Source: Octopus sinensis (Eukaryota). Taken from it: a stretch of 64,000 nt of DNA. The position numbers and the translations under genes were made by a program. The notes under the pieces are model-generated. The model did no database searches and had not been told where the DNA came from. It saw nothing but the letters and a program-made list of their open reading frames with translations. Positions 11,089 to 63,300 of the stretch are shown here, piece after piece; positions within the stretch are counted from its first letter, which is position 1; the number at the start of each line of letters is the position of its first letter. The stretch covers positions 1-64,000 of the forward strand of contig NW_021832839.1 of assembly GCF_006345805.1 (NCBI RefSeq), written 5' to 3'.

Positions 11089-11879
11089 TCTTTATTATAA
11101 CTAAAAACATTAGTAAAATATTTTTAAAACGTTTAACTATGATATAAATTTAAAAATGTCAAAATGACAAGGTCAAAAAATAGGATAAGAAAATGATTAA
11201 AGAATAAAAAACCGCATACTTTTTACGTACAATTCGTCAGTGAAGGGAGTTCTAATTTATAATCTACGCGTTTTCGTGAAAATTTGAGAAATTGAATATT
11301 CACTATTAATGATAATTGAATAAATAGTATGACTAATGATTTAGGACAACCATTCAATCAAAACATACAATAAACTAATAATTTATTAAATATAAATAAT
11401 TAGTAAAAAATAAGAAATTAAGCAGTTATAACGACAGAAGATTATTTCACCTTTTTAGCTGTTTCGACTCAACGAACTGGTTCTTGATATTTACTAATTT
11501 AAAAGGGCGATGCTTGTTTGTCCAAGGATATATTCAATTTTACTAATTTTATTACAAAATATTCCAAAAATGTTTATTAATAATAAAAATTTATCTAAAA
11601 ATAATATGAATTCTGTTTAAATGCGGATAAAACGATATAATTTTTTAAAAATATACGTCGAATTAGCGTAGACTTCTTTTTTAATCTTTCAAAATCTCAA
11701 AAGTGGTTTTACCTTGTAGAGGTCGAACTCGAGTTGTATTTTTAATAAAAAATCATCTTATTTTTTCATTGGAAAATCAATTCGTTAATTAATTCGAGCA
11801 AAAATCAATAACTAAGTATAAATAACACATTTCAGAGGTTTTTATTGGATTATGAAGAGAAATTATTTCAAAAATTAAA

Positions 11880-12420
11880 ATTTATGATAAGCCTGTTTAG
11901 ATAAAGGATTATCATAGAACGAACACTGTCGCATGGGAAGTTTCTTAAAGATTTAGCTACTTGACAAGGAAAAAGCTTTTATTTTTGAAAAGGGAAACTT
12001 TTGAGGTTCTTTGCATCTGACAAAGCTAAATTAAAAATGAAAACTATTGAATAAAACGTAGTGATTAAAATTTCAAGGCTGTCACAATTCTGACCATTTT
12101 GGTAGAGATAAGCTTCTTATTTCATTAGCTATGAAATAAAAAGACTGCAAGTCTGTAAAATTATCTGACAGTGCGTTCTTTGTCAGGCAAGATAAGTAAT
12201 TTAATTTGTAGTCTAAACAGTTAATGCGATATAAACCTTTTATTACACTATATTTGCTTATGCGCCACGGAACAGGTATATTGTTGATCTCGTGGATCTA
12301 CAAAGATACTCGGAAAAAAACGATTCAACGTAGACGACTTAGTAATATCAAGAAACGACATCGTTTTAAATAACAAAGTCCTTATTATATGACAATATAT
12401 CTGCGAAAATATATACCTTC
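11880..12420 (+). mobile_element. Degraded rve-type integrase/transposase remnant (Ginger2/KRBA2-like)
   Basis: Broken frames give DHFGRDKL, a CxxV remnant and PRNRYIVDLVDLQRYSEKND, resembling an HHCC plus integrase core start. Confidence 0.4.
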
Positions 12421-27265: not shown

Positions 27266-27309
27266 TTAATTTTTACAATTTGTTTGAATCTTTCTGTTCA
27301 TATTACATA

Positions 27310-29319
27310 TCTTAAATATAAATGGTATGGTGTGTGTCTGTCTGTGTGTCTGTTCTGTCTGTGTGTCCTGTCTGTCTGTCTGTCGTGCTGTGTGTGGCAC
27401 ACCAACTTCAAATTGGCAATACGATGTCCTCGACTTACATGATGAGGTCCTTAAAACCTTCCCCCCCAAAAAAATTAAAAAAAATTTTCTGCATTTTGGT
27501 TAAAATGAACACTACAATGTCCTCGACTTACATGATGAGTCCTTAAAACCTTCCCCCCCAAAAAAATTAAAAAAAAATTTTCTGCATTTTGGTTAAAATG
27601 AACAACTACAATGTCCTCGACTTACATGATGAAGTCCTTAAAACCTTCCCCCCAAAAAAATTAAAAAAAAATTTTTGCATTTTGGTTAAAATGAACAACT
27701 ACAATGTCCTCGACTTACATGATGAGGTCCTTAAAACCTTCCCCCCAAAAAAATTAAAAAAAAAATTTTCTGCATTTTGGTTAAAATGAACAACTACAAT
27801 GTCCTCGACTACATGATGAAGTCCTTAAAACCTTCCCCCCCAAAAAAAATTAAAAAAAAATTTTCTGCATTTTGGTTAAAATGAACACCTACAATGTCCT
27901 CGACTTACATGATAAGTCCTTAAAACCTTCCCCCCCAAAAAAAATTAAAAAAAATTTTCTGCATTTTGGTTAAAATGAACAACTACAATGTCCTCGACTT
28001 ACATGATGAATCCTTAAAACCTTCCCCCCCAAAAAAATTAAAAAAAAAATTTTCTGCATTTTGGTTAAAATGAACAACTACAATGTCCTCGACTTACATG
28101 ATGAAGTCCTTAAAACCTTCCCCCCCAAAAAATTAAAAAAAAAATTCTGCATTTTGGTTAAAATGAACAACTACAATGTCCTCAACTTACATGATGAAGT
28201 CTTAAAACCTTCCCCCAACAAAAATTAAAAAAAATTTTCTGCATTTTGGTTAAAATGAACAACTACAATGTCCTCGACTTACATGATGAAGTCCTAAAAC
28301 CTTCCCCCCCAAAAATCAAAAAATTATTTTCTGCATTTTGATTAAAATGAACACGCGAATGTCCTCGACATTCATGATGAGGTCCATTAAAACTTCAAGG
28401 CAAAAATCTCACGTATTAAGAATATCCTTGATGAAAACGACAGCGAGAATATTAACAATGATGAACTCCCAATTATTCGCGATAAAGAAATTCAATTCAT
28501 CCTATGTTTTTCTCTTTAAATTAAATGCATATATCATTATCGACCATGAATCAAAATTAAAGCTATTATCATATTTGTAACACAATTTACCACCAATTGA
28601 CAGCGCAATCAGAAGAATTTGCGTAAAATATTAGCTATTTAGTTAAGTTTTTCGTGAAGATAGAATTTATTTTCGGTATGCCTCTTTTCCTAAATTTTTT
28701 TTTTTATTATTCAAAAATATTTTTTCAATAGATAACCGAAAGAGGGAAGACGACCTTAAGAAAAGAAGTTTTTCGTAAAGATAGAATTTATTTTCTGTAT
28801 GCCTCTTTTTTCCTAATATTTTTTATTATTCAAAAATAATTTTTTAAATAGATAACCGAAGGAGGAAAAATGAAGCTGAAGAAGAGGGCTAACGTAATAA
28901 AGGCGACGATATTAACAGGTAAGTATTGAGGTGAGGATGTTTATATTCCACGAATTCCGATAATTTCTGATGAATTACCATTTAGATTTAAAAGGCTGCA
29001 ATTTCCTTTGAGGATGAGTTTTGCAATGACAATAAACAAGGCCCAGGGACAGTCATTAAAGGTAGTTGGGTTATTTTTAGAGAGTGAGTGCTTTTCACAT
29101 GGACAGCTGTATGTGGGATGCTCGAGGGTAGGCAGAAGAGAAAATTTATTCATATATGCCAAGGAAGGACGGACGACAAACATCGTTTATCAACAGGCGA
29201 TAGAATAGGGTTACATTAAACCAGGTAGTTTATTACATCTACATAAACTTATAGTTGTTGATGAAACAGGCCCTCCGCAGGAGCTAGGTCGCGGTGAGCG
29301 AAGCGAGCTGCCGAGCTAG
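27310..29319 (+). mobile_element. Non-autonomous Helitron, copy 1
   Basis: 5' TC preceded by A, (GTCT)n microsatellite, ~93-bp tandem array, Pif1-type helicase C-terminus (FAMTINKAQGQSL...FSHGQLYVGCSRV), subterminal hairpin and 3' CTAG followed by T. Confidence 0.87.
27420..28380. repeat. ~93-bp tandem minisatellite, about 10 units, inside Helitron 1
   Basis: Unit aaaatgaacaactacaatgtcctcgacttacatgatgaagtccttaaaaccttccccccaaaaaaattaaaaaaaattttctgcattttggtt. Confidence 0.95.
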
Positions 29320-29321
29320 TA

Positions 29322-31328
29322 TCTTAATAATAAAATGGTATGGTGTGTGTCTGTCTGTGTGTCTGTCTGTCTGTGTGTCGTCTGTCTGTCTGTCTGTCTG
29401 TGTGTGCACACCAACTTCAAATTGGCAATACGATGTCCTCGACTTACATGATGAGGTCCTAAAACCTTCCCCCCCAAAAAAATTAAAAAAAAATTTTCTG
29501 CATTTTGGTTAAAATGAACAACTACAATGTCCTCGACTTACATGATGAAGTCCTAAAACTTCCCCCCCAAAAAAAATTAAAAAAAATTTTCTGCATTTTG
29601 GTTAAAATGAACAACTACAATGTCCTCGACTTACATGATGAAGTCCTTAAAACCTTCCCCCCCAAAAAAATTAAAAAAAAATTTCTGCATTTTGGTTAAA
29701 ATGAACAACTACAATGTCCTCGACTTACATGATGAGGTCCTTAAAACCTTCCCCCCCAAAAAAATTAAAAAAAAATTTCTGCATTTTGGTTAAAATGAAC
29801 AACTACAATGTCCTCGACTTACATGATGAAGTCCTTAAAACCTTCCCCCCCAAAAAAAATTAAAAAAAAATTTTCTGCATTTTGGTTAAAATGAACAACA
29901 ACTACATGTCCTCGACTTACATGATGAAGTCCTTAAAACCTTCCCCCCCAAAAAAAATTAAAAAAAAATTTTCTGCATTTTGGTTAAAATGAACAACTAC
30001 AATGTCCTCGACTTACATGATGAAGTCCTTAAAACCTTCCCCCCAAAAAAAATTAAAAAAAAAATTCTGCATTTTGGTTAAAATGAACAACTACAATGTC
30101 CTCGACTTACATGATGAAGTCCTTAAAACTTCCCCCCCAAAAAAATTAAAAAAAATTTTCTGCATTTTGGTTAAAATGAACAACTACAATGTCCTCAACT
30201 TACATGATGAAGTCCTTAAAACCTTCCCCCCCAAAAAAAATTAAAAAAAATTTTCTGCATTTTGGTTAAAATGAACAACTACAATGTCCTCGACTTACAT
30301 GATGAAGTCCTTAAAACCTTCCCCCCCAAAAAATCAAAAAATTATTTTCTGCATTTTGATTAAAATGAACAACGCGAATGTCCTCGACATTCATGATGAG
30401 GTCCATTAAAACCTTCAAGGCAAAAATCTCACGTATTAAGAATATCCTTGATGAAAACGACAGCGAGAATATTAACAATGATGAACTCCCAATTATTCGC
30501 GATAAAGAATTCAATTCATCCTATGTTTTTCTCTTTAAAATTAAATGCATATATCATTATCGACCATGAATCAAAATTAAAGCTATTATCATATTTGTAA
30601 CACAATTTACCACCATTGACAGCGCAATCAGAAGAATTTGCGTAAAATATTAGCTATTTAGTTAAGTTTTTCGTGAAGATAGAATTTATTTTCGGTATGC
30701 CTCTTTTCCTAAATTTTTTTATTATTCAAAAATAATTTTTTCAATAGATAACCGAAAGAGGGAAGACGACCTTAAGAAAAAGTTTTTCGTAAAGATAGAA
30801 TTTATTTTCTGTATGCCTCTTTTTTCCTAATTTTTTATTATTCAAAAATAATTTTTAAATAGATAACCGAAGGAGGAAAAATGAAGCTGAAGAAAGATGG
30901 CTAACGTAATAAAGGCGACGATATAACAGGTAAGTATTGAGGTGAGGATGTTTATATTCCACGAATTCCGATAATTTCTGATGAATTACCATTTAGATTT
31001 AAAAGGCTGCATTTCCTTTGAGGATGAGTTTTGCAATGACAATAAACAAGGCCCAGGGACAGTCATAAAGGTAGTTGGGTTATTTTTAGAGAGTGAGTGC
31101 TTTTCACATGGACAGCTGTATGTGGGATGCTCGAGGGTAGGCAGAAGAGAAAATTTATTCATATATGCCAAGGAAGGACGGACGACAAACATCGTTTATC
31201 AACAGGCGATAGATAGGGTTACATTAAACCAGGTAGTTTTATACATCTACATAAACTTATAGTTGTTTGATGAAACAGGCCCTCCGCAGGAGCTAGGTCG
31301 CGGTGAGCGAAGCGAGCTGCCGAGCTAG
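29322..31328 (+). mobile_element. Non-autonomous Helitron, copy 2 (near-identical, adjacent)
   Basis: Same TC start, microsatellite, array and helicase remnant (with a frameshift). CTAG at 31325-31328. Confidence 0.87.
29428..30400. repeat. ~93-bp tandem minisatellite inside Helitron 2
   Basis: Same unit as the first array, with the same variant units. Confidence 0.95.
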
Positions 31329-31755
31329 TTCCATATAAACATAAAGTAAATTTAGTTCTCCTGTTTGAAGATTTGTGCTCAACGTAATTCTTTGCTATTT
31401 CGAGTTCTCTTAGGCGTATTATAACGTTCGCTTCTCCGTGAAATAGAAACTTGGCTTGATTTTAAAAATGTATTTAGAAATTTTGTGCTCATTAAACAAT
31501 GTCTTACCTCCTGATTTGACGAGGGCTGGCTTCAGAAAATAAACCATTTTTTAAAATCATCAGTGAATTTCATTGAGTCCGATTTCTGATTTATACGTCG
31601 CAAATTCTTCGGATTTCCTTTCTGATAATTACGGGGGATTAGTCCTCTTGGGCAAACCAGTAGAAGCAAATGTTTTAGCTTATAAAAGTAATATAAAACA
31701 AGAATATTAAATAATTCAAAATAACAGCATGTGACAAATGTTTTACGTGATCTGA

Positions 31756-37000: not shown

Positions 37001-37226
37001 TTATTGCTAGTGCGTTAGAAGTTATATGATTGCATGAAATATTTGGTTTTTTTTTCGTTGCAATATAGAGAGGTTTAAATGTACATGATTACCAAATAAT
37101 TTAAATTATACTAACAAATTTTGAATCTTTTTTTTGTTTTCTAATAGATTTCATGACGTAAAAATGTCAAAAATTATACTAAGTATTAATTAAAGTATAA
37201 TTTTCTCAATCTGTTCATTACTTCCT

Positions 37227-38135
37227 CTATTCTGATATTCCCTCAGGTAAGGATGCCAGCCTCTTTCCTTGGGAAGTGCTGACAGGCAGTGGCGAAGTTA
37301 TGGTCATATCTATTTGTCGATAAATTGCTTTTATTCTTTTGTCCAGTTCGAGAGTCCTTTGGCATGGCTCAATTCTGTTCCTATAGGAAACAATCATGCT
37401 CTCAAGGGTTTTTTTGATAGTGAGTGATTGTATATACGCATGTGTTCTCTCATTGATGTTCAACGATTGTGCATACTGTTGGAATTTTGAAGTGACAAGT
37501 CCGTCCCAAGTTAATACAATCGGTACTATTTTCACATTGGCATGATATATCAACTCCAGTTCCTTTGATAGAAGGTCATACTTTCTAAGTTTTTCTACCT
37601 CCACTTGTTGTAGGTTTGGGGCAGATGTTATCCCAACCTCAATCAGGAATATCCGGTTGTTCTTCTTGTCAAAGACAAACAAATCGGGCTTGTTATGTTC
37701 TAGTATTATGTCTGTTTTAATGAAGGTGTCCACTTTGATTTCGACAAACTCATTAACAGACACAGTTTGTACAGAGTGAGTTTTCAGCTTCTTCTCATTC
37801 TTGAGTCCGTATTCTCGACATAAATGAAAATGAATACACCTAACTACTTCATTATGCCTTCTAACATAGTCCCCATGCAGCATCTTTTCACATCTGGTAG
37901 CACAGTGGTCGACAGTCTTCTTCCATTTCATACAGTGTGGACACATTAAATTGTGGTCTGCGACGAATAAATTTCTATCCTGTAGAAGACAGAACAAGCC
38001 TTCTGACCGTTGAGAATTATTGCCTCTGGCTAGCCAGTGACTGAAATCTTCAACCTTCACGAAATCTTCCTTAGAATTTTTATAGAGAATTGAGAATTGT
38101 GAATCTAATTTCAATACTGCGAGTAATATGATCAA
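37227..38135 (-). mobile_element. 5'-truncated non-LTR retrotransposon with CCHC knuckle and restriction-like endonuclease (REL)
   Basis: 302-aa ORF: CPHCMKWKKTVDHCATRC, RRHNEVV, HNKPDLFV...IEVGIT...EKLRKY (PD..D/ExK). Confidence 0.85.
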
Positions 38136-38420
38136 ATAGTAAATTAAATGATCTAAGAGTGGTGAAGTACAAGTACAAGAAATTTGAATTTTTGAACAAG
38201 ATATGTCAATGAGTGTGTAAAGAGACGATTTATCGGGGGTAAAAGTAAATTAATAATTATCAGCCATTCAAGAAATAATTGCGATTGAATAATTTTAATT
38301 TGATTCATTCTACGACAACTCCCAAACACTAATGAGCTGATTTAAATTATTTTATTGATTCTCAAAAAGATATATAATCGTAGAAAAGTGCAGAATTTAA
38401 TTTTCAACAGTCAGTCTACA

Positions 38421-39344
38421 ATGGTCACTCTCCACCTCCTTCTCGACTTCCCGATTGTCCAGGCAATTCTCGCAGCAATCACAGTCGGCATTTTGCCTGC
38501 ACTTCTCCTCATTTTCGTGAGCGTAAACAAAAGTAACTGGGACGGGTCCTTGGAGGTGACATGGATAATGTCCAACTCGTAGATTCTGCTCGCCTTTGCT
38601 TCCGGGGGGTTGCTCTCGGACGTATTTTTCCACTTGATGCCTGAAATATTCATCACCGCCAACACAGCCAACAACGGATATTTCATTTTAGTGGGACTCT
38701 ATGGCTTTTTTGCTTTGGAAAGAGTCCTCAATTTGACTCTCAAAGCATCCCCGACCGACGCCCCAGAGGAACCTTCGGAGCCGATTGTCACGGAGTCGAC
38801 AACCATTCGTCGCAGAACGAAAGAGAAAAGTGACGCAGAGCACAGTGCGAAAGAGCAGGTTTCAATGAAGGCGCAAGGATTCGTCAACCTCGTAGGGGAT
38901 TTTGTGCACAACATCACTGACGGGCTGATCATCGGCGCGTCGTTTATGCACAGCACATCTCTCGGACTGAGTTCGTCATTTTCTATTCTGTGCCACGAAT
39001 TTCCCAACGAGATTGGGGACTTTGTCAGTCTAATCAACGCCAATTGCACCAAAAAGCAGGCTTGTTTCCATGTCTTATGATAGGCAATACTCCTCCAGTT
39101 CGTCACGGCACTGGGCTTCATTTTTGGCGTCATCCTGTCATTTGTTTTAGGCAATTTGAGTTCGCGTATTGAGAGTGTTTTGATTCCCTTCTGCACCGGG
39201 GGGTTCATATACATCGGCACTGTAAACATGCTCGGGCCGCTCACAAAGGGCTCCCACCAAGTCGGGGGAATGCGACACACTTTCCAAATATTGCTTTCTG
39301 CCTTGGCTGGAGTTGCTTTTCTCGTTTTAGTTAGCAAAATATAG
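38421..39344 (+). CDS. ZIP (SLC39, LIV-1/ZIP7-13-like) metal transporter, copy A
   Basis: LLAFASGGLLSDVFFHLMPE, DFVHNITDGLIIGASF, CHEFPNEIGDF, IPFCTGGFIYIGTV. Introns of 27 nt (GT-AG) and 24 nt (GC-AG, 39060-39083). Confidence 0.92.
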
Positions 39345-39570
39345 TCACTGCTCTCATCATTTGGAACGTTTTCGAGTCTTTGTTCATTCATTCGCATTTG
39401 CTCAAAGCACTCTTAGTTTCAGCGAGATGATTCACAACCAATGAATCTTTGCGTCATTGTATATAAACGTGTATTTTTATTTAAATAAAGTCAATTCATA
39501 AGTGAAATATACATTGTTCAGACCTTCTGCATGAATAAAAGAGAATGTCAAATATTTCGGTCATCTTTTA

Positions 39571-39880
39571 ATGGTTTTGTATTTGGTTAATGTCTAATAG
39601 TCGAGAAAGTTCATTTCAACCGATCTCGAGAGTTTTTTTCCAGTCATTTTGTTAGATGTCAAAAAATGTTTTGACCAATTGGACTTGGACAGCAACGGGA
39701 AAATAAACGCCAGAGAACTCAGCAAAGTTTTTAATCTTGCGGGTGTCTGCTGTACAGAAGAAGAATGTCGAAATCTAATTAAATCTTGCGACCAGGATAG
39801 CGATGGAAATATCAATTTTAAAGGTGCAATTTAATTTTCATTCAACAGAATTCCTCGATCTCATTTCAAACGACTCTTAG
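39571..39880 (+). CDS. Small two-EF-hand (half-calmodulin-like) protein, copy A
   Basis: Loops DLDSNGKINARE and DQDSDGNINFK|E. Three introns inferred, the first directly after the ATG. Confidence 0.75.
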
Positions 39881-40139
39881 CTACTCCAGTATCGAATATA
39901 ATCATTTAACAATTGTTGTTTTTGAATAAACAAAATTAACATTAATACATTGAATAGACTGAATTTAACTGTTTTGACTAAAAATATCTGAAAGTTAGAT
40001 TTGCTTTAATTCCACTTTTTACTAACTCATTTGACAAGAAACAAAAATAAGCCAAGAGGCGACGAGATTAGAATGATGACTTACAGGCTCTTATTTGTTA
40101 TATACCTCGAGGCTGCCTTCTAGGACATAAAAGCAAAAA

Positions 40140-40300
40140 TCCTTTACGAAAAATAAGCCAATTCAATGTGGAAGTAGGTGTTACTTCAATCGATAATGTA
40201 AAATTAGTGGAAGTAGAAAAATTGCACACATATAAAATTCTAGTCATGAATTGCAGTTGTCTCAAGATTGAGATGACCATTGTGATAAATGTCTATTTTT
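40140..40300 (+). mobile_element. Short REL-endonuclease fragment of the same retroelement family
   Basis: VEVGVTSIDNVKLVEVEKLHTYKIL parallels IEVGITSAPNLQQVEVEKLRKYDLL. Confidence 0.55.
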
Positions 40301-47168: not shown

Positions 47169-49138
47169 CAGGGGTTCTCAAGTGCGGCCCTCGGGGCCGC
47201 ATGCGGCCCCGAGAATCTTTTTTGCGGCCCCGACTTCCAAACTTTAAAATAAATTTTGGATATAAAATTAATTGTAAATTAATATTATTAAAGATATATT
47301 TTAACTACACGTGTTTGTAAATATATTTCAGGTTGAGTATTTTTTCATGCCATCAAAGAAATATCGAACATTATCTCAAGAAAATAGAGAATTTCAAATT
47401 GAATGGGAAGAAAAGTTTTTTTTCGTTGAACTGAATGTTAAAGCTGTTTGTTTGATATGCAACTGTGTCATTAATTCATTGAAAAATTATACTATTGAAC
47501 GTCATTATAAGAAGCACTCCGAAATATACAATTTATATCTCGGAGAGTCAAGGAAAAAAAAACTCAATATATTAAAGACGTCATTTAAAAATCAGTCCTC
47601 AATATTTAAACCAGTGGAAAATAAGCATCAGTTATTAACGTCTTATAAAATTAGCCACCTTCTTGCTGTAAATATGAAACCTTATTCTGACGGAGAAATT
47701 ATTAAAACTGCTATTTCCATTTTTTGTGATGAATGTTGTCTGTCAAATATACAAAATATTGCAAAACGATTACCATTAAGTAATGATACTATTACAAGAA
47801 GAATAGAATGTATTTTTGAGGACCTTGCCCGTCAGCTAATCAAGTTCTTTACTATTAAAAATAATTTTTATAGAACATCGAAAGATTTTTTATATCATTC
47901 TTTTGCTGTCGACACGAGTAAAGATATCTCTGATACCGAACAAATGGTCGTATGCATTAGAGGTGTCACTTCGGATTTTAAAATTTCTGAAGAATTTTTT
48001 TCTCTTCGTTCATTAAAAGGCACTACAAAAGGAATGGATGTACTTAACGAATTCCTTGAAAGTATTAAAGAATTTGACATTGATCCTTCCAAAATAATTT
48101 CCATATGTACTGATGGGGGGGCGAATATGATTGGTCGTAATAAAGGGTTTCATGGACTTTATTCAGAATGGAGACTTGAAAAAAATCTTGATCCTATATT
48201 TTGGCAACATTGTATCATTCATCAGGAGAATATAATCGCAAAGTCACTTAAAATGCAAAATGTAATAAGTACGGTGTTGTCCATTGTGAATTGGATACGC
48301 GGTAAATCTCTCAATCACAGGAGATTTAAAAAAATGTTAGTGGAAATTGACACAGTGCATAATGATGTGCTTTACCATACCTTGGAGGGATCAAATAATG
48401 CTCAAAGATACAATTCATTTTACTTGTTTGAGTGAAAATAAAGCTAACGGTTCATTTGAAAAATATACTACCATTATCAGTCACCTTATTGTTGAATTTG
48501 AAAAACGTTCTAAGGTTTATTAAAATTAGTTTATTTTAAGAATTTTGATGAAATTTTGCCATCAATGAAAATTTTTGCAGCACCATTCAATATAGATCCT
48601 AAGAATGCTCCGCCATCACTCCAATTAGAATTGATAGACCTTCAATCAGATGTGCAATTTACCTCAGTGCAAAAGATTGAAAATTTAATGGAATTTTATA
48701 GTTCACTTCCCAAAGAAAAATATCCGAATATACTCATAAATGCTTATAAATATGCTTCAATGTTCGGATCCACTTATTTATGTGAGTCAATTTTCAGTAA
48801 AATGATTCACATAAAAAATAAATATCGAAATAAATTGACTGATAATCACTTATGCCAGCTTTTGCGATCTACATGTGCCTCCTATATTCCGTGTTATGAC
48901 AAATTAGTTAACAATTAGTTAAAATAGCTAACAATTTTTCGTTTTAGTTAACATTTTTCGTTTTAGTCATTTTCCTTTAATTAATTAAGACTAACTATCT
49001 CGGTTCTGAATAAAAAATGAATCTAAAAAAAAATTAGTTAAAAGTTAATGAAAGTTTTAATTTAATTTATTCTGCGGCCCCGAAGACAATGGTTAATTAT
49101 CGATTTGGCCCCGACGTTAAAAAACTTGAGAAACCCTG
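47169..49138 (+). mobile_element. hAT (Buster/SPIN-like) transposon, internally deleted
   Basis: TIRs CAGGGGTTCTCAAG / CTTGAGAAACCCTG. 8-bp TSD CACTAGAC (47161-47168, 49139-49146). GCGGCCC subterminal repeats. Transposase halves with CTDGG, HCIIH and FGSTYLCE. Confidence 0.95.
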
Positions 49139-54189: not shown

Positions 54190-54400
54190 CTATTTTGACA
54201 GCTGTTAGCTCCAATATGCCAAAAGCATGATTGAGCACTTTCCTAATCTTTTCGATGTTTTCTGAAACAAAATCTGCGTCATCCGAGTAAATCAGTTCTG
54301 TAGTCGAAATTGCTTTAATTTTCGCTTTTATTTCCTAGAAGGCAGCCTCAAGGTATATAACAAATAAGAGCCTGTAAGTCATCATTCTAATCTTGTCGCC
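54190..54400 (-). mobile_element. LINE RT core fragment overlapping the end of the duplication arm
   Basis: LFVIYLEAAF*EIKAKIKAISTTELIYSDDADF (YxDD region). Confidence 0.55.
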
Positions 54401-54577
54401 TCTTGGCTTATTTTCTTGTCAAATGAGTTACTCAAGGTAAACATAAAGTAAAAAGTGGAATTAAAGAAAATCCAACTTTAAGTTATTTTTAGTCAAAACA
54501 GTTAAATTCAGTCTATGTTAATTTTTTTTTATTCAAAAATAACAATTGTTAAATGATTATATTCGATACTGGAGTAG

Positions 54578-54887
54578 CTAAGAGTCGTTTGAAATGAGAT
54601 CGAGGAATTCTGTTGAATGAAAATTAAGTTGCACCTTTAAAATTGATATTTCCATCGCTATCCTGGTCGCAAGATTTAATTAGATTTCGACATTCTTCTT
54701 CTGTACAGCAGACACCCGCAAGATTAAAAACTTTGCTGAGTTCTCTGGCGTTTATTTTCCCGTTGCTGTCCAAGTCCAATTGGTCAAAACATTTTTTGAC
54801 ATCTAACAAAATGACTGGAAAAAAACTCTCGAGATCGGTTGAAATGAACTTTCTCGACTATTAGACATTAACCAAATACAAAACCAT
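54578..54887 (-). CDS. Two-EF-hand protein, copy B
   Basis: Essentially identical coding sequence to copy A. Confidence 0.75.
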
Positions 54888-55113
54888 TCAAAGATGACCG
54901 AAATATTTGACATTCTCTTTTATTCATGCTGAAGGTCTGAACAATGTATATTTCACTTATGAATTGACTTTATTTTAATAAAAATACACGTTTATATACA
55001 ATGACGCAGAGATTCATTGGTTGTGAATCATCTCGCTGAAACTAAGAGTGCTTAGAGCAAATGCGAATGAATGAACAAAGACTCGAAAACGTTCCAAATG
55101 ATGAGAACAGTGA

Positions 55114-56037
55114 CTATATTTTGCTAACTAAAACGAGAAAAGCAACTCCAGCCAAGGCAGAAAGCAATATTTGGAAAGTGTGTCGCATTCCCCCGACTTG
55201 GTGGGAGCCCTTTGTGAGCGGCCCGAGCATGTTTACAGTGCCGATGTATATGAACCCCCCGGTGCAGAAGGGAATCAAAACTCCCTCAATACGCGAACTC
55301 AAATTGCCCAAAACAAATGACAGGATGACGCCAAAAATGAAGCCCAGTGCCGTGACGAACTGAAGGAGTATTGCCTATCATAAGACATGGAAACAAGCCT
55401 GCTTTTTGGTGCAATTGGCGTTGATTAGACTGACAAAGTCCCCAATCTCGTTGGGAAATTCGTGGCACAGAATAGAAAATGACGAACTCAGTCCGAGAGA
55501 TGTGCTGTGCATAAACGACGCGCCGATGATCAGCCCGTCAGTGATGTTGTGCACAAAATCCCCTACGAGGTTGATGAATCCTTGCGCCTTCATTGAAATC
55601 TGCTCTTTCGCACTGTGCTCTGCGTCACTTTTCTCTTTCGTTCTGCGACGAATGGTTGTCGACTCCGTGACAATCGGCTCCGAAGGTTCCTCTGGGGCGT
55701 CGGTCGGGGATGCTTTGAGAGTCAAATTGAGGACTTTTTCCATAGCAAAAAAGCCATAGAGTCCCACTAAAATGAAATATCTGTTGTTGGCAGTGTTGGC
55801 GGTGGTGAATATTTCAGGCATCAAATGGAAAAATACGTCCGACAGCAACCCCCCGGAAGCAAAGGCGAGCAGAATCTACGAATAGGACATTATCCATGTC
55901 ACCTCCAAGGACCCGTCCCAGTTACTTTTGTTTACGCTCACGAAAATGAGGAGAAGTGCAGGCAAAATGCCGACTGTGATTGCTGCGAGAATTGCCTGGA
56001 CGATCGGGAAGTCGAGAAGGAGGTGGAGAGTGACCAT
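55114..56037 (-). CDS. ZIP metal transporter, copy B
   Basis: Intact frame with several amino-acid differences from copy A (NG/NR, LER/MEK, VS/IS, ES/EG). GC-AG intron at 55375-55398. Confidence 0.92.
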
Positions 56038-56547
56038 TGTAGACTGGCTGTTGAAAATTAAATTCTGCACTTTTCTACGATTATATATCTTTTTGAGAAT
56101 CAATAAAATAATTTAAATCAGCTCATTAGTGTTTGGGAGTTGTCGTAGAATGAATCAAATTAAAATTATTCAATCGCAATTACTCCTTGAATGGCTGATA
56201 ATTATTAATTTACTTTTACCCCGGATAAATTGTTCTCTTTACACACACATTGACAAATCTTGTTCAAAAATTCAAATTTCTTATATTTCACTACTCTTAG
56301 ATCATGACGTATTACTCGGAGTGTCGTTACTATCATTCCGTGTTCTGAGCTTTTTTCTTCAAAGTAATTTTTATTGGTAACTTTGATTAACAATCGCCTC
56401 AAAATTCACAATTGTCGCTTTCCTGTCCAAATAGTCAACCACCAAGTAGTTACTTCTATGCAGATAATCAAATTATTTGACAATAGTGTTTTTATAAATT
56501 GTTTGAGTAATACAACAAAAAAGCAACATCACAATTTGTTTACAAAA

Positions 56548-58062
56548 TCATCGTAAAATATCAAACGTGTCACCATCCTCAATCATTTCACTGCAAAATG
56601 TGCGCGGCGGAGACTTGATCGGTATTTCTTCTACGACCTGATCGTCCGAATTTACAGGGCGGTGGAATGTCGCATCAATCAGAGACTGCAAAGGCGTTTG
56701 TTTCCTTTCATTGGTCGTTGAATTGAGTTGACTATTCAGCGAAGGGAGGCTGTTGAGCATTGCGAGTGGCGTCGGCAATTTTTTAGAAACTTTCTGGATG
56801 GACTGCTTGTCTTCCATTTTTCGTTTCCTTGGCCGATAAATCGTAGGGACAGCCCGTTTATCAGGCACAATAAACGCATAGTTCTGCTGAATCTCATTTA
56901 TCTCGTCCTGAGGAGCCTGAGGAGTGGCCGGTGGAGACACTCGGTCACAGAGAATGCAGGGTTTCTGAAAACGAATAATCGCCTGCTTTCCCGACGACTT
57001 GCGTATTTCATGCTTAAGCAACTCCGAACGTGCCATGTCCACCACACAGCTCAAAATAGAACGAGGAAACTCATCAGAACTCCCCATTTGGGACGAAGGG
57101 GCCACCCAGTCGTACATAAGTTCGATCGGGGACTTGGAGCCGAGCATTAAGTAGACCTCCACCACCGAGAGCTGTCCAGCCTTGCCGACAGAAAGTCCTC
57201 CTTCCCACAGGGCAGTCACACTTTCGAGAGAACCAGAGAAATTGGACAAATTGCGACTCAAATTGTTGGTATTTTGGAGAATACTGGACGTGTGGGAGTC
57301 CGTGTTGTGCAGTCGAATTCTCCCAGAAGAGGACACCAGTTGGTATGCCACAGCACTCTTCCCACTCGGAAGGAACATCCTCATGTCCCCATTCCCCAAC
57401 CGTTCTCCCAACAGTTCGAGCAGCACCCCCATTTGCTGTCCGTGAGGCACTCTCAACTGCAGATTAGCCACAAAGCCACTGCGTTGGACAGTCAGGAGAG
57501 CCTGGACAGACCGAGGACGGAGGGACAACATCAAAGTGTCAGGAAGGAAACTTGAGAGGACAGTTTCGTGTTTTTTGAACAATTCAGAGAGAGCATTGCT
57601 TCTGGGCATTTTGACCTTCAAATACTTCTCTTTGTGGGGGATTCCGAGTCTGGCGAGTGTGTTTTTGCCCACGAGGATGCTCCGATTAAAGACCAGTCCG
57701 TTCAGGAACTTGAGGAAATGTGGAGAAGAGTCCACCTTGCCCAGTCGACGGTACAATTCTCCGTAGGCGACGAGCACGGAGACTTGGCGAATGTCGGTGG
57801 GGACATCAGACCCGAAGGAGACATGTCCATCCAGTCGACGGAAATTACGGAAGAAAAATAGTCGAATTTGACGGACACTTTTGGGGGGTCTTGGCCGACG
57901 TGCATAATTTATTCGTGCAGTCAGTTTGTGGAAGTCCTTTCCGTATTTGCACAAGAGTGAGTAGAAGGCAATTCGGTCCTCAGTGTCCCATATCTTGGCC
58001 ACCTTGGGAGGGGGGTCTGTGGTTTGTGGGGCAGTATCTTCCGTCTTGTTGACATCCTCCAT
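56548..58062 (-). CDS. CRAMP1: Cramped-like SANT-domain chromatin protein
   Basis: WDTEDRIAFYSLLCKYGKDF...KSVRQIRLFFFR...VLVAYGELYRRLG matches the cramped SANT region. 506-aa continuous ORF. Confidence 0.75.
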   Translation of the reverse strand: MEDVNKTEDTAPQTTDPPPKVAKIWDTEDRIAFYSLLCKYGKDFHKLTARINYARRPRPPKSVRQIRLFFFRNFRRLDGHVSFGSDVPTDIRQVSVLVAYGELYRRLGKVDSSPHFLKFLNGLVFNRSILVGKNTLARLGIPHKEKYLKVKMPRSNALSELFKKHETVLSSFLPDTLMLSLRPRSVQALLTVQRSGFVANLQLRVPHGQQMGVLLELLGERLGNGDMRMFLPSGKSAVAYQLVSSSGRIRLHNTDSHTSSILQNTNNLSRNLSNFSGSLESVTALWEGGLSVGKAGQLSVVEVYLMLGSKSPIELMYDWVAPSSQMGSSDEFPRSILSCVVDMARSELLKHEIRKSSGKQAIIRFQKPCILCDRVSPPATPQAPQDEINEIQQNYAFIVPDKRAVPTIYRPRKRKMEDKQSIQKVSKKLPTPLAMLNSLPSLNSQLNSTTNERKQTPLQSLIDATFHRPVNSDDQVVEEIPIKSPPRTFCSEMIEDGDTFDILR

Positions 58063-58189
58063 GACCACAAGACTTAACTATTTAATAATTTTATTATTTT
58101 ATTGAATATTATTAACAGGTTTGTTTGAATTTGTAATTACTACTGTCACTGTGATCATAAATGAGAAAACTTTTCACTAAAAATTGTTT

Positions 58190-59800
58190 TATACGTAAAT
58201 CACATAGCTGATCCCTAAGAAGGACGTGTGTGACTCCCCCAAGGATTTGAGGCCAATCTATGCCGAATTTATATAAGTTGACAACGAAATGTGTAAACAT
58301 AAAGTTGTCAGAGTATATTGATGCTTTCGGATAAGTGACAATCAACTGGGCACAAGAAGAATGTGCAAAAGAACAAGCCATAATCAATCAGATCATGTTT
58401 TCTTAGACTATTTGTTACAAAAGTCTGGACTTGCTTATTGGATTGTCTGCTTTATTCAGAGTCTTATTAACAAATGGAAAATACGATTGACTTTTGAAAA
58501 TAAATCATTGGGTCAAGTAAAAATAAGAAGAGGAATTTTGCAAGGAGACTTTGTCGCCACAGATCTTTGTGTTGGTATTGGACCCTTTGAGTCGAATGTT
58601 AAATGGAAAATGCCCGAAAGTAACAATGGGGAATCGGATACCGATACTTAGGAGTTCTTGAAGATATGAACAGTAATGTCCTTAAAAAAGAAATTATGGG
58701 GAAAATTTATAATGAGGCATCCACTCGGATTAAGACGGAATTAAACTCTGTGAATTTATTTAAGGCGATAAACGAATTTTCACTCTCTCTATATAAATGA
58801 TTGATATCGAGCCAGGGGAATTTGAACAAATTGACAAAAATGTCAGCAGAATTCTTACGGAGAGCCATATTCACATGCAACCGGCAAACAAAGAAAGACT
58901 ATATTTACCAAGAAATAAACTTGGAAGAGGTCTCGAGTGTGTCAGTAACAAATCTGAACGAATGCTATTCCAATTTTATCATGACTTGAAGCATAAAGCC
59001 GATTACTGCCTAAGAAGAGAGGGAATTCTACGGGTCGTCAATTCACAGAAAACTCACATTGCCACTATCGTAGAATTCATATCCCGAAAGTACAATATCA
59101 AAAATATAAATGAACTGACAATAACTAAATTGGTGGAATTGAACATGAATATCTAATGAGGCAGATTGAAACTAAGCCACTGCATTCTATTCTTTTCCAG
59201 TGTTTGAAGGACACTGAAGTTAATGAATCGCAGGATGGGTAGTTCATGGAAATAACTCGCCAATTAAGTTGTGGAAATTCGAGTGGACAGAACTATTTCT
59301 ACGGATACGGCTGTTTCAAACAATAAACCAGATATTTTTGTCCATGACAAGATGAGGAATACAATTACACTCATTGAAGTTGGGATTACCTCACAAAATT
59401 GCCTAAAGCAAGTTGAAGTGGAAAAGTTCCACAAATATGACCTTTGGCAAATGAATTAGGGGCGATTCATCGGGCTAGAGTGAAGATAATCCCTGTTGTA
59501 CTTACTCGGGATGGAATTGTCTCAAAATTCTTCAAAAGTAATCTGGATTCTATCGCAGTGGAAGACAGAGTGAAGGCATATATTCAAACACTCGTTTTAA
59601 GAAAAACATTGGAGAGTATGCAGGTGGAGACAAGACATGGAATATCGGTTCCCGGAGAGGAGCATGCAGTGATTGAATGTCAACCGAAGGATTCTTCTCT
59701 ACCAGGAATACGTGTACCGACTATGATAGTTGGGCATAAGAGACGAAGACTGTCCTAAATATAGATGCTTAAAAAAATGCTATTATAAATTTTTATTACT
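58190..59800 (+). mobile_element. Degraded, internally deleted REL-type non-LTR retrotransposon (same family as 37227-38135)
   Basis: IRRGILQGD, ERLYLPRNKLGRGL, NNKPDIFV...IEVGIT...EKFHKYDL, IIPVVLTRDG. RT YxDD core missing; frameshifts. Confidence 0.85.
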
Positions 59801-59844
59801 CAATAAAATTATTAACCTATATGTTAATTTGTAATTACTACTAT

Positions 59845-61157
59845 ATGTCACTGAGAAAACTGTTCACTAAAAATTCCAACCAACGCCAATCTCTACCCAA
59901 AAACAAAATAATTGTGTTTGATTCCGGCCCTGTCACAATTGACAGTGTGATTGGCTACGGTGATAAGAATATGTGTTAGTCACAGGCGGCTATTCGGTCA
60001 TTTTTGCTGCCAAACGAAAGAAAGGCAATACCATGGCCCTCAAACAGTCCAACGTGAACACGGAAGCCAATCTAAACAGCTGCATTATGGAAATAAACGT
60101 GATGGTTTGTCCATTTCTTCATCCCAGAAAAAGTGCAGTCATCCCAACATCATTAAATACGTCGACAGTCATTACACCAAAATCGATTCCTTTCGTTCAG
60201 AAGTCTTTCTTTTGATGGAGTTGTGCAAAAGTGCTGGTTTTGTTTATTTTGTAGAAAGTGTGTTTCAGTTGTTGGAGGAGAATGCAGTCAAAGGACTCAA
60301 AGACGACCTCATTCTTCGAATCCTCAGAGACCTTTGCAGTGGACTGTCAGTCCTCCACGACAACTCTCCGCCAATCATCAACCGAGACATCAAAGTAGTG
60401 TTTCCCTCGTGTCCAGGCCGAGAATGTGTTGATAAACTCAAAAGGAGATTTTGTCCTCTGCGATTTTGGGAGTGCTGTGTACGAGACTCCCCTCGACGAG
60501 AATATGGACATTTCGGACATTTCTCAACTGGAGGAAGAGATCGCCCAGTTGTTGTGTGTCTCACAGTCGCAGAGCCACCACCTCGGGGTACCGACCCCCG
60601 GAAATGGTCGATTTGTACAGCGGAGAACACATTTCCTGCAAAGCTGACATTTGGGTTGTGCAGAGTTGTTGATTCGACTAGGCTGTGGGGTGTCTGCTCT
60701 TTCAGTTATGTTTTGTCGCCATGCCCTTCCAAGAGAACAAATTGGCCATTTTGTCAGCCAAATATTCGTTTCCCAAACCCTGCAATGCCCTGTTTGAGAG
60801 TGTCATTGGTCAGTTCTGTGGTCACTCACTTCCGTAGGGGACTGTCTCCAGGTCTCTCCCGCGAGTAGACCAAGTGTGGGGGACATTCTCAACTGCCTTA
60901 AGACTTGCACTTTGTCGAAGAAAGGCTCGAAAAAAACTAGTTTTCGCTTTATAAAACAAAAATCCGTTGATGTGAATGTTTATTGGTAGTTTGATCAGAA
61001 GCAAGTCCCCGATGATGTTTTTGAAGCAGCTCCTTTTGATTTTCCTCCAAATCCGTGGCCTTTGGACGAATCGGAGTTTGTGGCACAGGATGAGGGTGGA
61101 CTCAACCCGTTTATGAACGAAGATGGATGTGTGAACGAGTCATTTAAAGATTCATGA
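59845..61157 (+). CDS. NAK-family Ser/Thr kinase (AAK1/BMP2K-like)
   Basis: Spliced: IGY|GGYSVIF...MALK...NRDIK|AENVL...LCDFGSA...YRPPEMVDLYSG...KADIW|AVGCLL. Tail carries DVFEAAPF and NPF. Confidence 0.9.
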
Positions 61158-61639
61158 CCTAACTTGACATATTTGTTTTATTAATTATATTTGTTATTTT
61201 TATTGGAACATTCATGTTCTGTTGACGCGACTGTATCCCTAACAATATAACGGAGTCCATTGGCTTATATAGTCATAGGAATGGAATAGTTTTTTAAGAC
61301 TCCGGGTTCGGGCACGCTCGTTTTTAGGCCAATTTTCTGAAATAAGTAATTTTCAAAGGCAGACTAGATATTTCACGACCCGGAACGGGGAATTTTTAAT
61401 ATTCAATTTTGCATTTTTAAAATTTTTTTAAAAAATTAACTCAAATGTATGTTGGTAACATCAATTCAATAATCGTTTAATATTTGACGATAAAAAATGA
61501 AACAGTTAAAGTAACGAGAAAATTGGATAAATTAAAAATTGTGACGCTATAATAACAGAAAATTGGGTTTCTTGTAGGCTTAAAACCACGGAAATTCCTT
61601 CAGTTCAAAGGAACTGGGATAATATTTATTGCTCACACA

Positions 61640-62039: not shown

Positions 62040-63300
62040 TTGAAAATTTTCTTAACATTTCGTTTACGACATGTTTATTAGTTCTTTATAATGGTGTCCT
62101 CAATTGTTACGGGATCACAAATCTTTTCAATATGATTCCAACAGTTCAATATTAAATGTTCCTCTACTCTTAGAAATGAATTCATCATAAATTCAGTATG
62201 TATAAATTAGAATTAGTTGCTCCTAAAAACAACCAAAATCTCCTCAAGGCCTCGCTATCTCTCAATGATCTTTTTTTTAAATCCGTTAAGCGACAACTCG
62301 CCTGTAGACGAGTTGTCGCCTAACTCGCCTAAATTTATTTGGCGACAACTCGTCTACAAAGAAAAATATTTTAAGGGTAAATAAAATAAAATTTTAAAAC
62401 AATTACTTTTTATTCTGAACTTTTAAAGCAAACCAAACCATCTATTAGCTTAAAATAGCAATCTACTTCAAATTCATGAAAATTTTAACATGCTATTCTC
62501 AGTTCAAGTTCCTTTTGCAGTCTGTCGCAGACACTTCAAGATACCTTCCTGACTTAATTTGTGTTATATCACAAAAAGTCTTTGTTCTTCATTGGCCAAA
62601 ACATTGACAAAAGCTGCCAAATTTGGGTTCTCTCTGTTAAACGAATTGTTCAACAGCTAATGCTAACCTTTTAATGAATTAGTTGTCCTAGGCATTGACT
62701 TTAATACCTGATGAAAACAACTCCAAAAACAAGATGGGTCAGCAATAAAATGTTTTTTAGAATAAATCAAAAAATTCATTATTTTTTGGTTGTTTTCTTT
62801 TCCTGTCGCATCAAGAGAAAATTTTTCAAATTCCAATAAAACATTTTCCACAGGGATGAAAGCTAAATAGTAGCATTTCCTCAATAATTTTCGTTCCCAC
62901 GATAAAACGTCTTTGTAGGCTCACACAAGACCGAGACATTGTATTTTCCGCATAGGATTTGACCGAAATGGAAATTACAGCCAATTACATTAGACGACGA
63001 AAAAATTAGACGGCATCTTTCTGGTCAGATGCTTTTTATCTTATGATCCTCAAAGGGGCCATGATTATGAGCATTTTTTGTACTCAACTTGTTTTAAGCA
63101 TCCACCGTGCACCTCGCCCTGCATTCTCGACTTCTGCACCTCCAATAGGTAAGACCGTGTTTTTTCTAAAAAAAACCAAAATCTCCTCAAGGCCTCGCTA
63201 TCTCTCAATGATCTTTTTTTTAAATCAGAGTGATTTCCCGATAAATCCCGAGGTCTCTACCGTAATCGGCATGAAAGGGTGATCTTTTGATGAATATTCA
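62040..63300 (-). mobile_element. MULE/FLYWCH transposase debris with a hairpin end and 53-bp flanking direct repeats
   Basis: YWRCRSRECRARC...HNH, GCNFHFGQ, LAFIPVENV, PRTTNSLKG. Inverted repeat 62303-62320 / 62341-62358. Confidence 0.6.

What the first reader, a model, noticed from the sequence alone, without database searches (positions are those of the whole stretch)
58105..59875. Retroelement inside the cramped/kinase head-to-head promoter, flanked by a ~70-bp duplication that regenerates the kinase start
Seen: 58109-58185 and 59809-59875 share ttattaac, an exact 17-mer aatttgtaattactact (58128-58144 = 59826-59842), tgtcact, and gagaaaact[t/g]ttcactaaaaatt (58163-58185 ~ 59853-59875). 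The right copy holds the kinase ATG (MSLRKLFTKN); the left copy is decayed. Inference: cramped (ATG 58062) and the kinase were ~85 bp apart head-to-head, and a REL element inserted in the first codons with an unusually long target duplication that rescued the gene. Known: REL clades (R2, R4, NeSL, CRE) are often site-specific. A family targeting gene starts or bidirectional promoters and self-repairing them by long TSDs would be notable in a genome with almost no safe intergenic space.
Basis: partly seen in the sequence, partly recalled or inferred. Interest (0 to 1): 0.7.

Follow-up and report, generated by a model that had tools for sequence, protein, structure and literature searches.

The report
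Dead retroelement with 71-bp target duplication
A dead, truncated jumping gene sits between two back-to-back genes of a dicyemid parasite, flanked by an unusually long 71-bp duplication that kept both genes intact. Intact relatives make only 13-bp duplications at unrelated sites, so this is a one-off accident, not a family strategy.

Summary
Window 58105-58185 and 59805-59875 are a direct repeat (61 matches, 6 mismatches, 3 indels; alignment score 62 against 15.5±2.4 for shuffles). It exactly brackets a decayed, 5'-truncated non-LTR retrotransposon with a restriction-like endonuclease (58186-59804, + strand).

The right copy carries 40 bp of upstream DNA plus the ATG (59845) and the first 10 codons of an intact NAK/AAK1-like kinase. 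The left copy is a decayed duplicate. It sits 42 bp from the ATG (58062) of a cramped-like gene on the other strand. Removing the insert and one repeat copy gives an 82-bp head-to-head spacer.

The mechanical reading therefore holds: target-primed insertion with breaks about 71 bp apart, and the duplication spared both genes.

The family-level idea fails. Three full-length relatives each have an exact 13-bp duplication at unrelated AT-rich sites. None of about a dozen other copies has a long flanking repeat. The host genome, a dicyemid, is about 49% repeats.

The best explanation is a rare insertion in which the element's normal second-strand nick was missed, as shown experimentally for R2. 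No empty site could be retrieved. Interest is low to moderate.

The parts
56548..58062 (-). cramped-like gene: a single 504-codon ORF with its ATG at 58062
   Evidence: ORF. phmmer gives E=1.6e-14 to a protein that NCBI names 'protein cramped-like' from Centruroides vittatus, matching query aa 18-196. Its homologues carry Myb_DNA-bind_7. The query's own Pfam hit is sub-threshold at E=0.034. GC is about 50%, against about 32% in the spacer.
58063..58104 (.). Unduplicated 42 bp of the original head-to-head spacer, lying next to the cramped-like ATG
   Evidence: It lies outside the significant repeat.
58105..58185 (+). Left copy of the target-site duplication: 81 nt and decayed, holding a pseudo-start of the kinase
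   Evidence: Its last base directly abuts the truncated element.
58186..59804 (+). Dead, 5'-truncated non-LTR retrotransposon with a restriction-like endonuclease. RT remnant from 58186. REL-endonuclease remnant at 59271-59444. ORF end at 59756-59758. Inferred 46-nt 3' UTR at 59759-59804.
   Evidence: tblastn to the intact 1180-aa reference ORF covers aa 417-1129 in six HSPs with frame changes, plus a roughly 100-aa internal deletion (aa 895-997, the CCHC region). Stop codons appear in every frame. The codon-level 5' junction alignment is. The C-terminus GHKRRRLS* matches the relatives' C-termini.
59805..59875 (+). Right copy of the target-site duplication (71 nt): 40 nt of upstream DNA plus the kinase ATG (59845), 10 codons and 1 nt
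59845..61157 (+). Intact NAK/AAK1-like protein kinase gene: nine exons with 22-29-nt introns
   Evidence: Exon map. Best hits are Pkinase-domain NAK, AP2-associated kinase and GAK-like proteins; the top one is 41% identical at E=3.7e-60. The N-terminal motif is shared with P0122 (MLKLFG) and P0123 (MKKIFG).
37180..38094 (-). Second, better preserved 5'-truncated copy of a related sub-family, with a 302-aa ORF holding the CCHC knuckle and the REL endonuclease. It served as the search query.

Best explanation
This is the fossil of a single target-primed reverse transcription event. The element is a non-LTR retrotransposon with a restriction-like endonuclease.

Inferred sequence of events:
1. The element's endonuclease nicked the bottom strand in the AT-rich 82-bp spacer between the cramped-like gene and the NAK kinase gene. 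The nick fell 42 bp from the cramped-like ATG and 40 bp from the kinase ATG.
2. cDNA synthesis was primed from that nick.
3. The top strand was not cut at the family's usual +13 position. It was broken about 71 bp downstream, inside codon 11 of the kinase.
4. An incomplete cDNA, truncated at RT residue about 439, was joined there by end-joining, possibly with a few bases of microhomology.
5. Fill-in synthesis duplicated the 71 bp between the two breaks.

Consequences. The duplicated block contains the kinase-proximal upstream DNA, the ATG and the first 10 codons. The kinase therefore kept an intact start on the right of the insert. The cramped-like gene kept all of its original upstream DNA on the left. 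The insertion was tolerated and then decayed.

What is shown and what is inferred. Shown: the anatomy, the junctions, the statistics, and the 13-bp norm in intact relatives. Inferred: the order of the nicks, the failure of second-strand nicking, and the survival-by-duplication argument.
For: - The repeat is far beyond chance.
- The left copy ends at 58185, and element homology starts at 58186-58187. There FYT.IT.LIPKK aligns codon for codon with WFYTG(I/L)TYLIPKK of four relatives.
- The right copy starts 46 nt after the element's stop codon. The 3' UTRs of the three full-length copies, measured from the junction sequences, run about 50-65 nt.
- Element orientation, 5' truncation and an A-rich 3' end are the standard marks of target-primed insertion.
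- Three full-length relatives have exact 13-bp duplications placed 13-20 nt before a conserved 5' motif (GTGGTGTxGTGCATGT) and directly after the 3' UTR. The 71-bp case is therefore atypical for the family.
- In a 124-aa endonuclease segment the focal copy is 60-65% identical to each of those three lineages. They are 58-63% identical to one another.
- Published experiments give the mechanism. R2 protein that is defective in second-strand nicking still inserts, but with large target-site duplications and end-joined 5' junctions with or without microhomology. R9 elements naturally make 126-bp duplications (PMC13486585, read).
- The kinase reads through nine exons without a stop and is a NAK kinase.
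Against: - No empty allele or orthologous locus could be retrieved, so the pre-insertion state is reconstructed rather than observed.
- The 3' end of this sub-family could not be fixed independently, because its 3' UTR has no significant similarity to any other copy. The duplication could therefore be about 71 to about 96 bp long.
- Only one other copy of the focal sub-lineage (L001 6653-7158) is available, and its ends are uncertain.
- There are no expression data for either gene.
Confidence: 0.8

Rival explanations
1. The focal sub-lineage (the focal copy plus L001 6653-7158) has evolved a long nick stagger as a regular property, as R9 did within the R2 clade. It may also prefer promoter-proximal AT-rich DNA. 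This is the surviving core of the reader's idea.
For: R9 shows that a regular 126-bp stagger can evolve in this kind of element (PMC13486585). The focal lineage is distinct from the three lineages with 13-bp duplications, at 60-65% identity.
Against: The only sister copy has no flanking repeat above background: score 24 against a null of 22.8±2.7. Three lineages about as far from the focal copy as from one another all use 13 bp. Other copies sit at unrelated sites, one of them past the end of an RPS13-like coding segment.
Confidence: 0.08
2. A 71-bp tandem duplication of the kinase 5' end already existed, and the element later inserted between the two copies.
For: Nothing specific. It cannot be excluded without an empty site.
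Against: Both repeat boundaries coincide with the element's ends. The left boundary matches to the base. The right boundary follows a 3' UTR of ordinary length. An insertion exactly at the seam of an earlier duplication would be a coincidence of roughly 1 in 70.
Confidence: 0.05
3. The similarity is chance or low-complexity resemblance between two AT-rich spacers.
For: The outer 27 nt of the BLAST alignment is indeed no better than chance.
Against: The core scores 62 against 15.5±2.4, with 0 of 2000 shuffles reaching it. It contains an exact 17-mer and a 24-mer with one mismatch, in the same order. No other copy's flanks reach such scores.
Confidence: 0.01

Closest known systems
R2-protein insertions with failed second-strand nicking (PRINT assays; PMC13486585, PNAS 2026)
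   Same: Both involve a restriction-like-endonuclease non-LTR element with a first nick at the normal site. In both, the 5' junction forms by end-joining downstream of the first nick, which gives a target-site duplication much longer than the element's norm. In both, the insert can be 5'-truncated.
   Different: Those duplications are about 1 kb, occur in human rDNA and come from engineered mutants. Here the duplication is 71 bp, in a natural ancient insertion in a dicyemid. The failure of nicking is inferred, not shown.
R9 elements of bdelloid rotifers (Gladyshev & Arkhipova 2009, Gene 448:145; cited in PMC5035012 and PMC13486585)
   Same: A restriction-like-endonuclease non-LTR element flanked by an exceptionally long duplication (126 bp).
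   Different: R9 is specific to the 28S rDNA and makes the same long duplication at every copy. Here the targets are unrelated, the family norm is 13 bp, and only this one copy has a long duplication.
Non-site-specific restriction-like-endonuclease non-LTR elements (the HERO clade and non-specific members of R4/NeSL; clade overview in PMC4640811)
   Same: A single ORF with RT, a C-terminal CCHC knuckle and a PD-(D/E)XK endonuclease, and no APE domain. Short target-site duplications, frequent 5' truncation, and dispersed AT-rich targets.
   Different: No clade was assigned here, because no reference sequences were available for an RT phylogeny. The closest sequence relatives found outside the dicyemid contigs are microsporidian 'reverse transcriptase' proteins at 48-58% identity.

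Membership tests
Restriction-like-endonuclease (RLE/REL) non-LTR retrotransposons | Single long ORF with a reverse transcriptase domain | tested here: met
   The intact 1180-aa ORF at L002:16807-20349 hits Pfam RVT_1 at E=2.6e-30. Its RT aligns to L1 ORF2p and R2 structures. The focal insert aligns to aa 417-1129 of this ORF.
Restriction-like-endonuclease (RLE/REL) non-LTR retrotransposons | C-terminal CCHC knuckle followed by a PD-(D/E)XK endonuclease motif, with no APE domain | tested here: met
   Read directly from the sequence: CxHCxxxKxTVDHxATxC, then NKPDIFV.D...IEVGIT...EVEK..KY, in the reference and in all relatives. Only RVT_1 is found by Pfam, and no Exo_endo_phos domain. Pfam restriction-enzyme hits on the focal remnant are sub-threshold. 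In the focal copy the CCHC part is deleted.
Restriction-like-endonuclease (RLE/REL) non-LTR retrotransposons | Marks of target-primed insertion: target-site duplication, variable 5' truncation, defined 3' end | tested here: met
   Exact 13-bp duplications in three full-length copies. Truncated copies. The focal copy has a 71-bp duplication.
Restriction-like-endonuclease (RLE/REL) non-LTR retrotransposons | Assignment to a named clade (CRE, R2, R4, NeSL, HERO) by RT phylogeny | not tested
   No reference sequences for these clades were available in the tools, apart from R2 chains in the PDB.
R9-type long-duplication elements | Site-specific insertion in 28S rDNA | tested here: not met
   The flanks are a cramped-like gene and a kinase gene. 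Rfam finds no family match, rRNA included, in 56000-61500 at E up to 1. Flanks of different copies share no sequence.
R9-type long-duplication elements | The same long duplication at every copy | tested here: not met
   Three full-length copies have 13 bp. No other copy has a long flanking repeat.
   The sample is only about a dozen copies from about 250 kb, so the test has limited power.
NAK (AAK1/BMP2K/GAK) protein kinases (the right-hand gene) | Protein kinase domain with closest relatives annotated as AP2-associated or cyclin-G-associated kinase, and a short M-x-K-[LI]-F N-terminus | tested here: met
cramped / CRAMP1 (the left-hand gene) | N-terminal SANT/Myb-like domain with homology to proteins named cramped | tested here: met
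   E=1.6e-14 to 'protein cramped-like' from Centruroides. The homologues carry Myb_DNA-bind_7. The dicyemid protein's own domain hit is sub-threshold, and the word-index search found nothing.

The most novel reading that the evidence does not exclude
In a genome with short head-to-head spacers, occasional long-stagger insertions may be the only insertions of this element class that survive close to genes. They could therefore be a recurrent way of splitting a shared bidirectional promoter into two separate ones. Here an 82-bp spacer became 1,782 bp, and each gene kept its own proximal copy. Alternatively, the focal sub-lineage may have evolved an R9-like long stagger.
Probability: 0.1. Interest if true: 0.55.

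Novelty: new member of a known kind. Interest (0 to 1): 0.27.

Why it matters
This is a clean natural example of something recently shown only with engineered R2 proteins. When the second-strand cut is not made at the usual place, an element of this class can still integrate, at the cost of a long target duplication.

Here the duplication happened to copy a gene start and half of a tiny bidirectional spacer, so two genes survived a 1.6-kb insertion. That helps explain how insertions very close to genes can persist in gene-dense DNA.

It is a single event, and the evidence argues against a dedicated targeting or self-repair strategy.

The work also documents three side results:
- a family of these elements in dicyemids, with an apparently intact 1180-codon copy;
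- its consistent 13-bp duplication;
- probable dicyemid contigs filed under Octopus sinensis.

Tried and rejected
- **Empty site or orthologue.** Exact-product look-ups of the cramped-like ORF, in both the 504-aa and 506-aa versions, found nothing. The word-index homology search of that ORF found nothing. The kinase search returned only distant relatives, at most 41% identical. The pre-insertion locus therefore could not be observed.
- **Pfam on the focal remnant.** Only sub-threshold hits. The family was identified instead through a better copy in the window and through full-length relatives.
- **Fixing the focal 3' end by 3' UTR homology.** No significant similarity to the sister copy or to six other copies.
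- **Outer extension of the repeat to 58078/59780.** Rejected as not significant.
- **Short duplications for 5'-truncated copies** (L001B, L002A, L005c, L006 and the window copy at 37 kb). Nothing above background. These copies are uninformative, not negative evidence.
- **Rfam scan of the full-length element and of the focal locus,** for example for a 5' HDV-like ribozyme. Nothing credible.
- **Shared target sequence among copies.** None found.
- **Clade name from the literature on microsporidian LINEs.** Not given in the papers read.

Full report
**1. What is in the sequence**

The region 57.7-60.3 kb holds three blocks.
- On the minus strand, a 504-codon ORF ends at its ATG at 58062.
- A 1.78-kb AT-rich block (32-38% GC) follows. 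The neighbouring exons run at about 50% GC.
- On the plus strand, a multi-exon gene starts at ATG 59845.

Smith-Waterman alignment of the two flanks gives a score of 70, against 20.4±2.5 for shuffles.

I split the alignment into two parts.
- The core is 58105-58185 vs 59805-59875. It scores 62 against 15.5±2.4, and 0 of 2000 shuffles reach it.
- The outer 27 nt that BLAST adds (58078-58104 vs 59780-59804) is no better than chance, p = 0.2-0.26. This holds against shuffles and against 311 other AT-rich 46-mers from the window.

The core has 61 matches, 6 mismatches and three indels of 2, 4 and 12 nt.

**2. The two genes**

*Right-hand gene.* It reads without a stop through nine exons separated by 22-29-nt GT-AG introns (59845-61157).
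- Its best relatives are kinases of the NAK group (AP2-associated kinase 1, GAK-like). The top hit is 41% identical at E=3.7e-60.
- Its N-terminus, MSLRKLFTKN, matches the short conserved N-terminus seen in other hits: MLKLFG in P0122 and MKKIFG in P0123.
- ATG 59845 is therefore very probably the true start.

*Left-hand ORF.*
- It found nothing in the word-index search, and its own Myb-like Pfam hit is sub-threshold.
- The exhaustive phmmer search gave 124 hits, the best at E=1.6e-14 over residues 18-196.
- That best protein is named 'protein cramped-like' from Centruroides by NCBI. The top homologues carry the same Myb_DNA-bind_7 domain.

**3. The host**

Several lines point to a dicyemid.
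- The introns are 20-29 nt.
- The element's closest relatives, at 92-97% identity, lie on contigs of the 'Octopus sinensis' assembly GCA_006345805.1.
- One of those contigs also has genes with tiny gaps between exon-like ORFs.
- Dicyema japonicum was collected from O. sinensis. Its genome is 67.5 Mb, with a mean intron of 38 bp and 48.9% repeats (PMC6736024).

The last figure contradicts the premise that this genome has almost no safe intergenic space.

**4. The insert**

The three-frame translation shows a broken RT (…RGILQGD…, YLG), a thumb region and a restriction-like endonuclease motif (NKPDIFVHDK…IEVGITSQ…EVEKFHKYD).

A better copy lies in the window at 37227-38135, on the minus strand. 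It has a 302-aa ORF with the CCHC knuckle and the endonuclease. I used it as the search query.

Fetching neighbours of the hits gave nine loci. Among them is an intact 1180-codon ORF at L002:16807-20349. It hits RVT_1 at E=2.6e-30 and has no APE domain.

Against this reference the focal insert behaves as follows.
- It covers residues 417-1129 in six HSPs, with frame changes between them.
- It lacks about 100 residues, including the CCHC region.
- It is full of stop codons.

It is a dead, 5'-truncated copy on the plus strand. It ends in GHKRRRLS*, as its relatives do (GSKRKRMN, GAKRRMVY).

**5. The junctions**

*5' junction.* Element homology begins at 58186-58187. TTT TAT ACG TAA ATC ACA TAG CTG ATC CCT AAG AAG aligns codon for codon with the WFYTG(I/L)TYLIPKK region of four relatives. 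The left repeat ends at 58185. The relatives read …(A/G)(A/T)TGG TTT… at this point and the target ends in …AAAAATT, so a few bases of microhomology are possible but cannot be proven.

*3' junction.* The stop codon is at 59756-59758, and the significant repeat starts at 59805. That leaves a 46-nt 3' UTR, close to the roughly 50-65 nt of the three full-length copies (from the junction sequences).

I could not confirm the 3' end independently, because the 3' UTR has no significant match in any other copy. The duplication is therefore at least 71 bp and at most about 96 bp.

*Reconstructed empty site.* Joining the flanks gives an 82-bp ATG-to-ATG spacer, with the first nick 42 and 40 bp from the two ATGs. 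The duplicated block is 40 bp of upstream DNA plus the ATG, 10 codons and 1 nt of the kinase.

**6. Is the long duplication a family habit? No**

All three full-length copies have an exact 13-bp duplication.

| Locus | Positions of the two copies | Sequence |
|---|---|---|
| L002 | 16781 / 20406 | TTAAGATTTAATA |
| L003 | 7591 / 11194 | TATTTAGTGACAT |
| L004 | 7492 / 11127 | ATGGTTAGCCGAG |

- Each upstream copy lies 13-20 nt before a conserved 5' motif (GTGGTGTxGTGCATGT). Each downstream copy follows the 3' UTR directly.
- The end of the L002 3' UTR is confirmed by an independent head-to-tail junction in L007-L009.
- In a 124-residue endonuclease segment, these three lineages are 58-63% identical to one another and 60-65% identical to the focal copy. 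The 13-bp stagger is therefore the likely ancestral state for the whole group.
- No other copy shows a flanking repeat above background. This includes the focal copy's only sister, L001 6653-7158, which is 77% identical in that segment.
- The flanks of different copies share no sequence.
- The sites are AT-rich, and GC-rich blocks usually begin 100 nt or more away.
- L004 sits just downstream of the end of an RPS13-like coding segment, not at a gene start.

The sample is small, about a dozen copies in roughly 250 kb. Every result in it goes against a gene-start-targeting, self-repairing family.

**7. Mechanism**

Established facts about target-primed reverse transcription fix the geometry for a plus-strand insert. 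The bottom-strand nick is at the left edge of the duplicated block. The top-strand break is at its right edge.

[quoted passage not shown] When that nick fails, insertion still happens, and the outcome shifts to large target-site duplications. The 5' ends are then joined downstream, with or without microhomology, probably at host-made breaks in the transcribed sense strand. The same paper notes R9's natural 126-bp duplication (PMC13486585).

The focal insert fits that pattern.
- The family norm is 13 bp, and this copy has 71 bp.
- The cDNA is truncated.
- The 5' junction lies in the sense strand of the kinase's first exon.

This step is an inference from analogy. It is not shown for this element.

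The 'rescue' is best read as survivorship. An insertion with a 13-bp stagger at the same nick would also have left both coding sequences intact. A break in codon 11 is harmless only because the DNA between the two breaks is duplicated.

**8. Comparison, novelty and score**

The element belongs to the non-LTR retrotransposons with a restriction-like endonuclease. I could not assign a clade.

The long duplication resembles R9 and the R2 nicking-defect insertions in outcome. It fails both defining features of R9: rDNA specificity, and a constant long duplication at every copy.

I rate it a new member of a known kind, and a tidy natural illustration of a known failure mode. Interest is 0.27.

The residual novel readings are a regular long stagger in this sub-lineage, or recurrent promoter splitting by such events. 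Together I give them about 0.1.

Noticed in passing
window 38113-40140 (+) vs 54318-56340 (-): A 2-kb inverted segmental duplication at 95.8% identity carries a ZIP-type metal transporter gene. The derived copy (38-40 kb) ends about 20 nt from the 5'-truncated end of the element copy at 37180-38094 (-). Its other end lies next to a short endonuclease relic at about 40160-40270 (+). This looks like a rearrangement or DNA capture tied to an aberrant retrotransposition 5' junction.
   Followed up: partly
window 27420-28393 and 29429-30416; also L001 2335-3792: Arrays of a roughly 94-bp tandem repeat lie inside a 2-kb tandem duplication (27308-29320 = 29320-31329, 96.5% identical). The same satellite, 92-94% identical, occurs on an 'Octopus sinensis' contig.
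   Followed up: no
L001-L009 (GCA_006345805.1 contigs VCDQ01008424, 01005136, 01011782, 01012393, 01001009, 01012903, 01002631, 01003741): Contigs and RefSeq proteins filed under Octopus sinensis (for example LOC115231995) share satellites and retroelements at 92-97% identity with this tiny-intron window. One of them, L005, itself shows tiny-intron gene structure. They are probably dicyemid parasite DNA in the octopus assembly.
   Followed up: partly
L002 16781-20418: An apparently intact full-length element: an 1180-codon ORF with no stops, a possible Myb-like N-terminal segment, RT, a CCHC knuckle and a restriction-like endonuclease, flanked by an exact 13-bp duplication. The family may still be active in this organism.
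   Followed up: partly
one search hit list (P0005, P0016, P0020 and others): Outside the dicyemid contigs, the closest relatives of the endonuclease half are 'reverse transcriptase' proteins of microsporidia (Vairimorpha apis, Hamiltosporidium, Nosema granulosis, Pancytospora) at 48-58% identity, plus a few lepidopteran records. This could reflect horizontal transfer among parasites, or contamination of those records.
   Followed up: no
L007, L008, L009 at about 9890-12070: A 5'-truncated copy (aa 915-1180) is joined head to tail, with at most about 5 nt between, to the 5' end of another copy (aa 3-439). The composite lies inside a repeat unit of more than 9 kb that occurs three times at about 99% identity.
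   Followed up: partly
window 58161-58211: The decayed left duplicate has gained a new in-frame ATG that opens a 16-codon ORF, MRKLFTKNCFIRKSHS*. This ORF begins with the kinase's N-terminal motif and runs into the element. Whether it is transcribed is unknown.
   Followed up: no
window 62223-62283 and 63166-63226; window 47311-48435: A 61-bp repeat at 98% identity lies downstream of the kinase. There is also a 374-codon ORF (47311-48435) that may be the remnant of another mobile element; this is an impression from the sequence and was not tested. Genes with FAM200/ZBED5 RNase-like Pfam families are annotated on L003 and L009.
   Followed up: no
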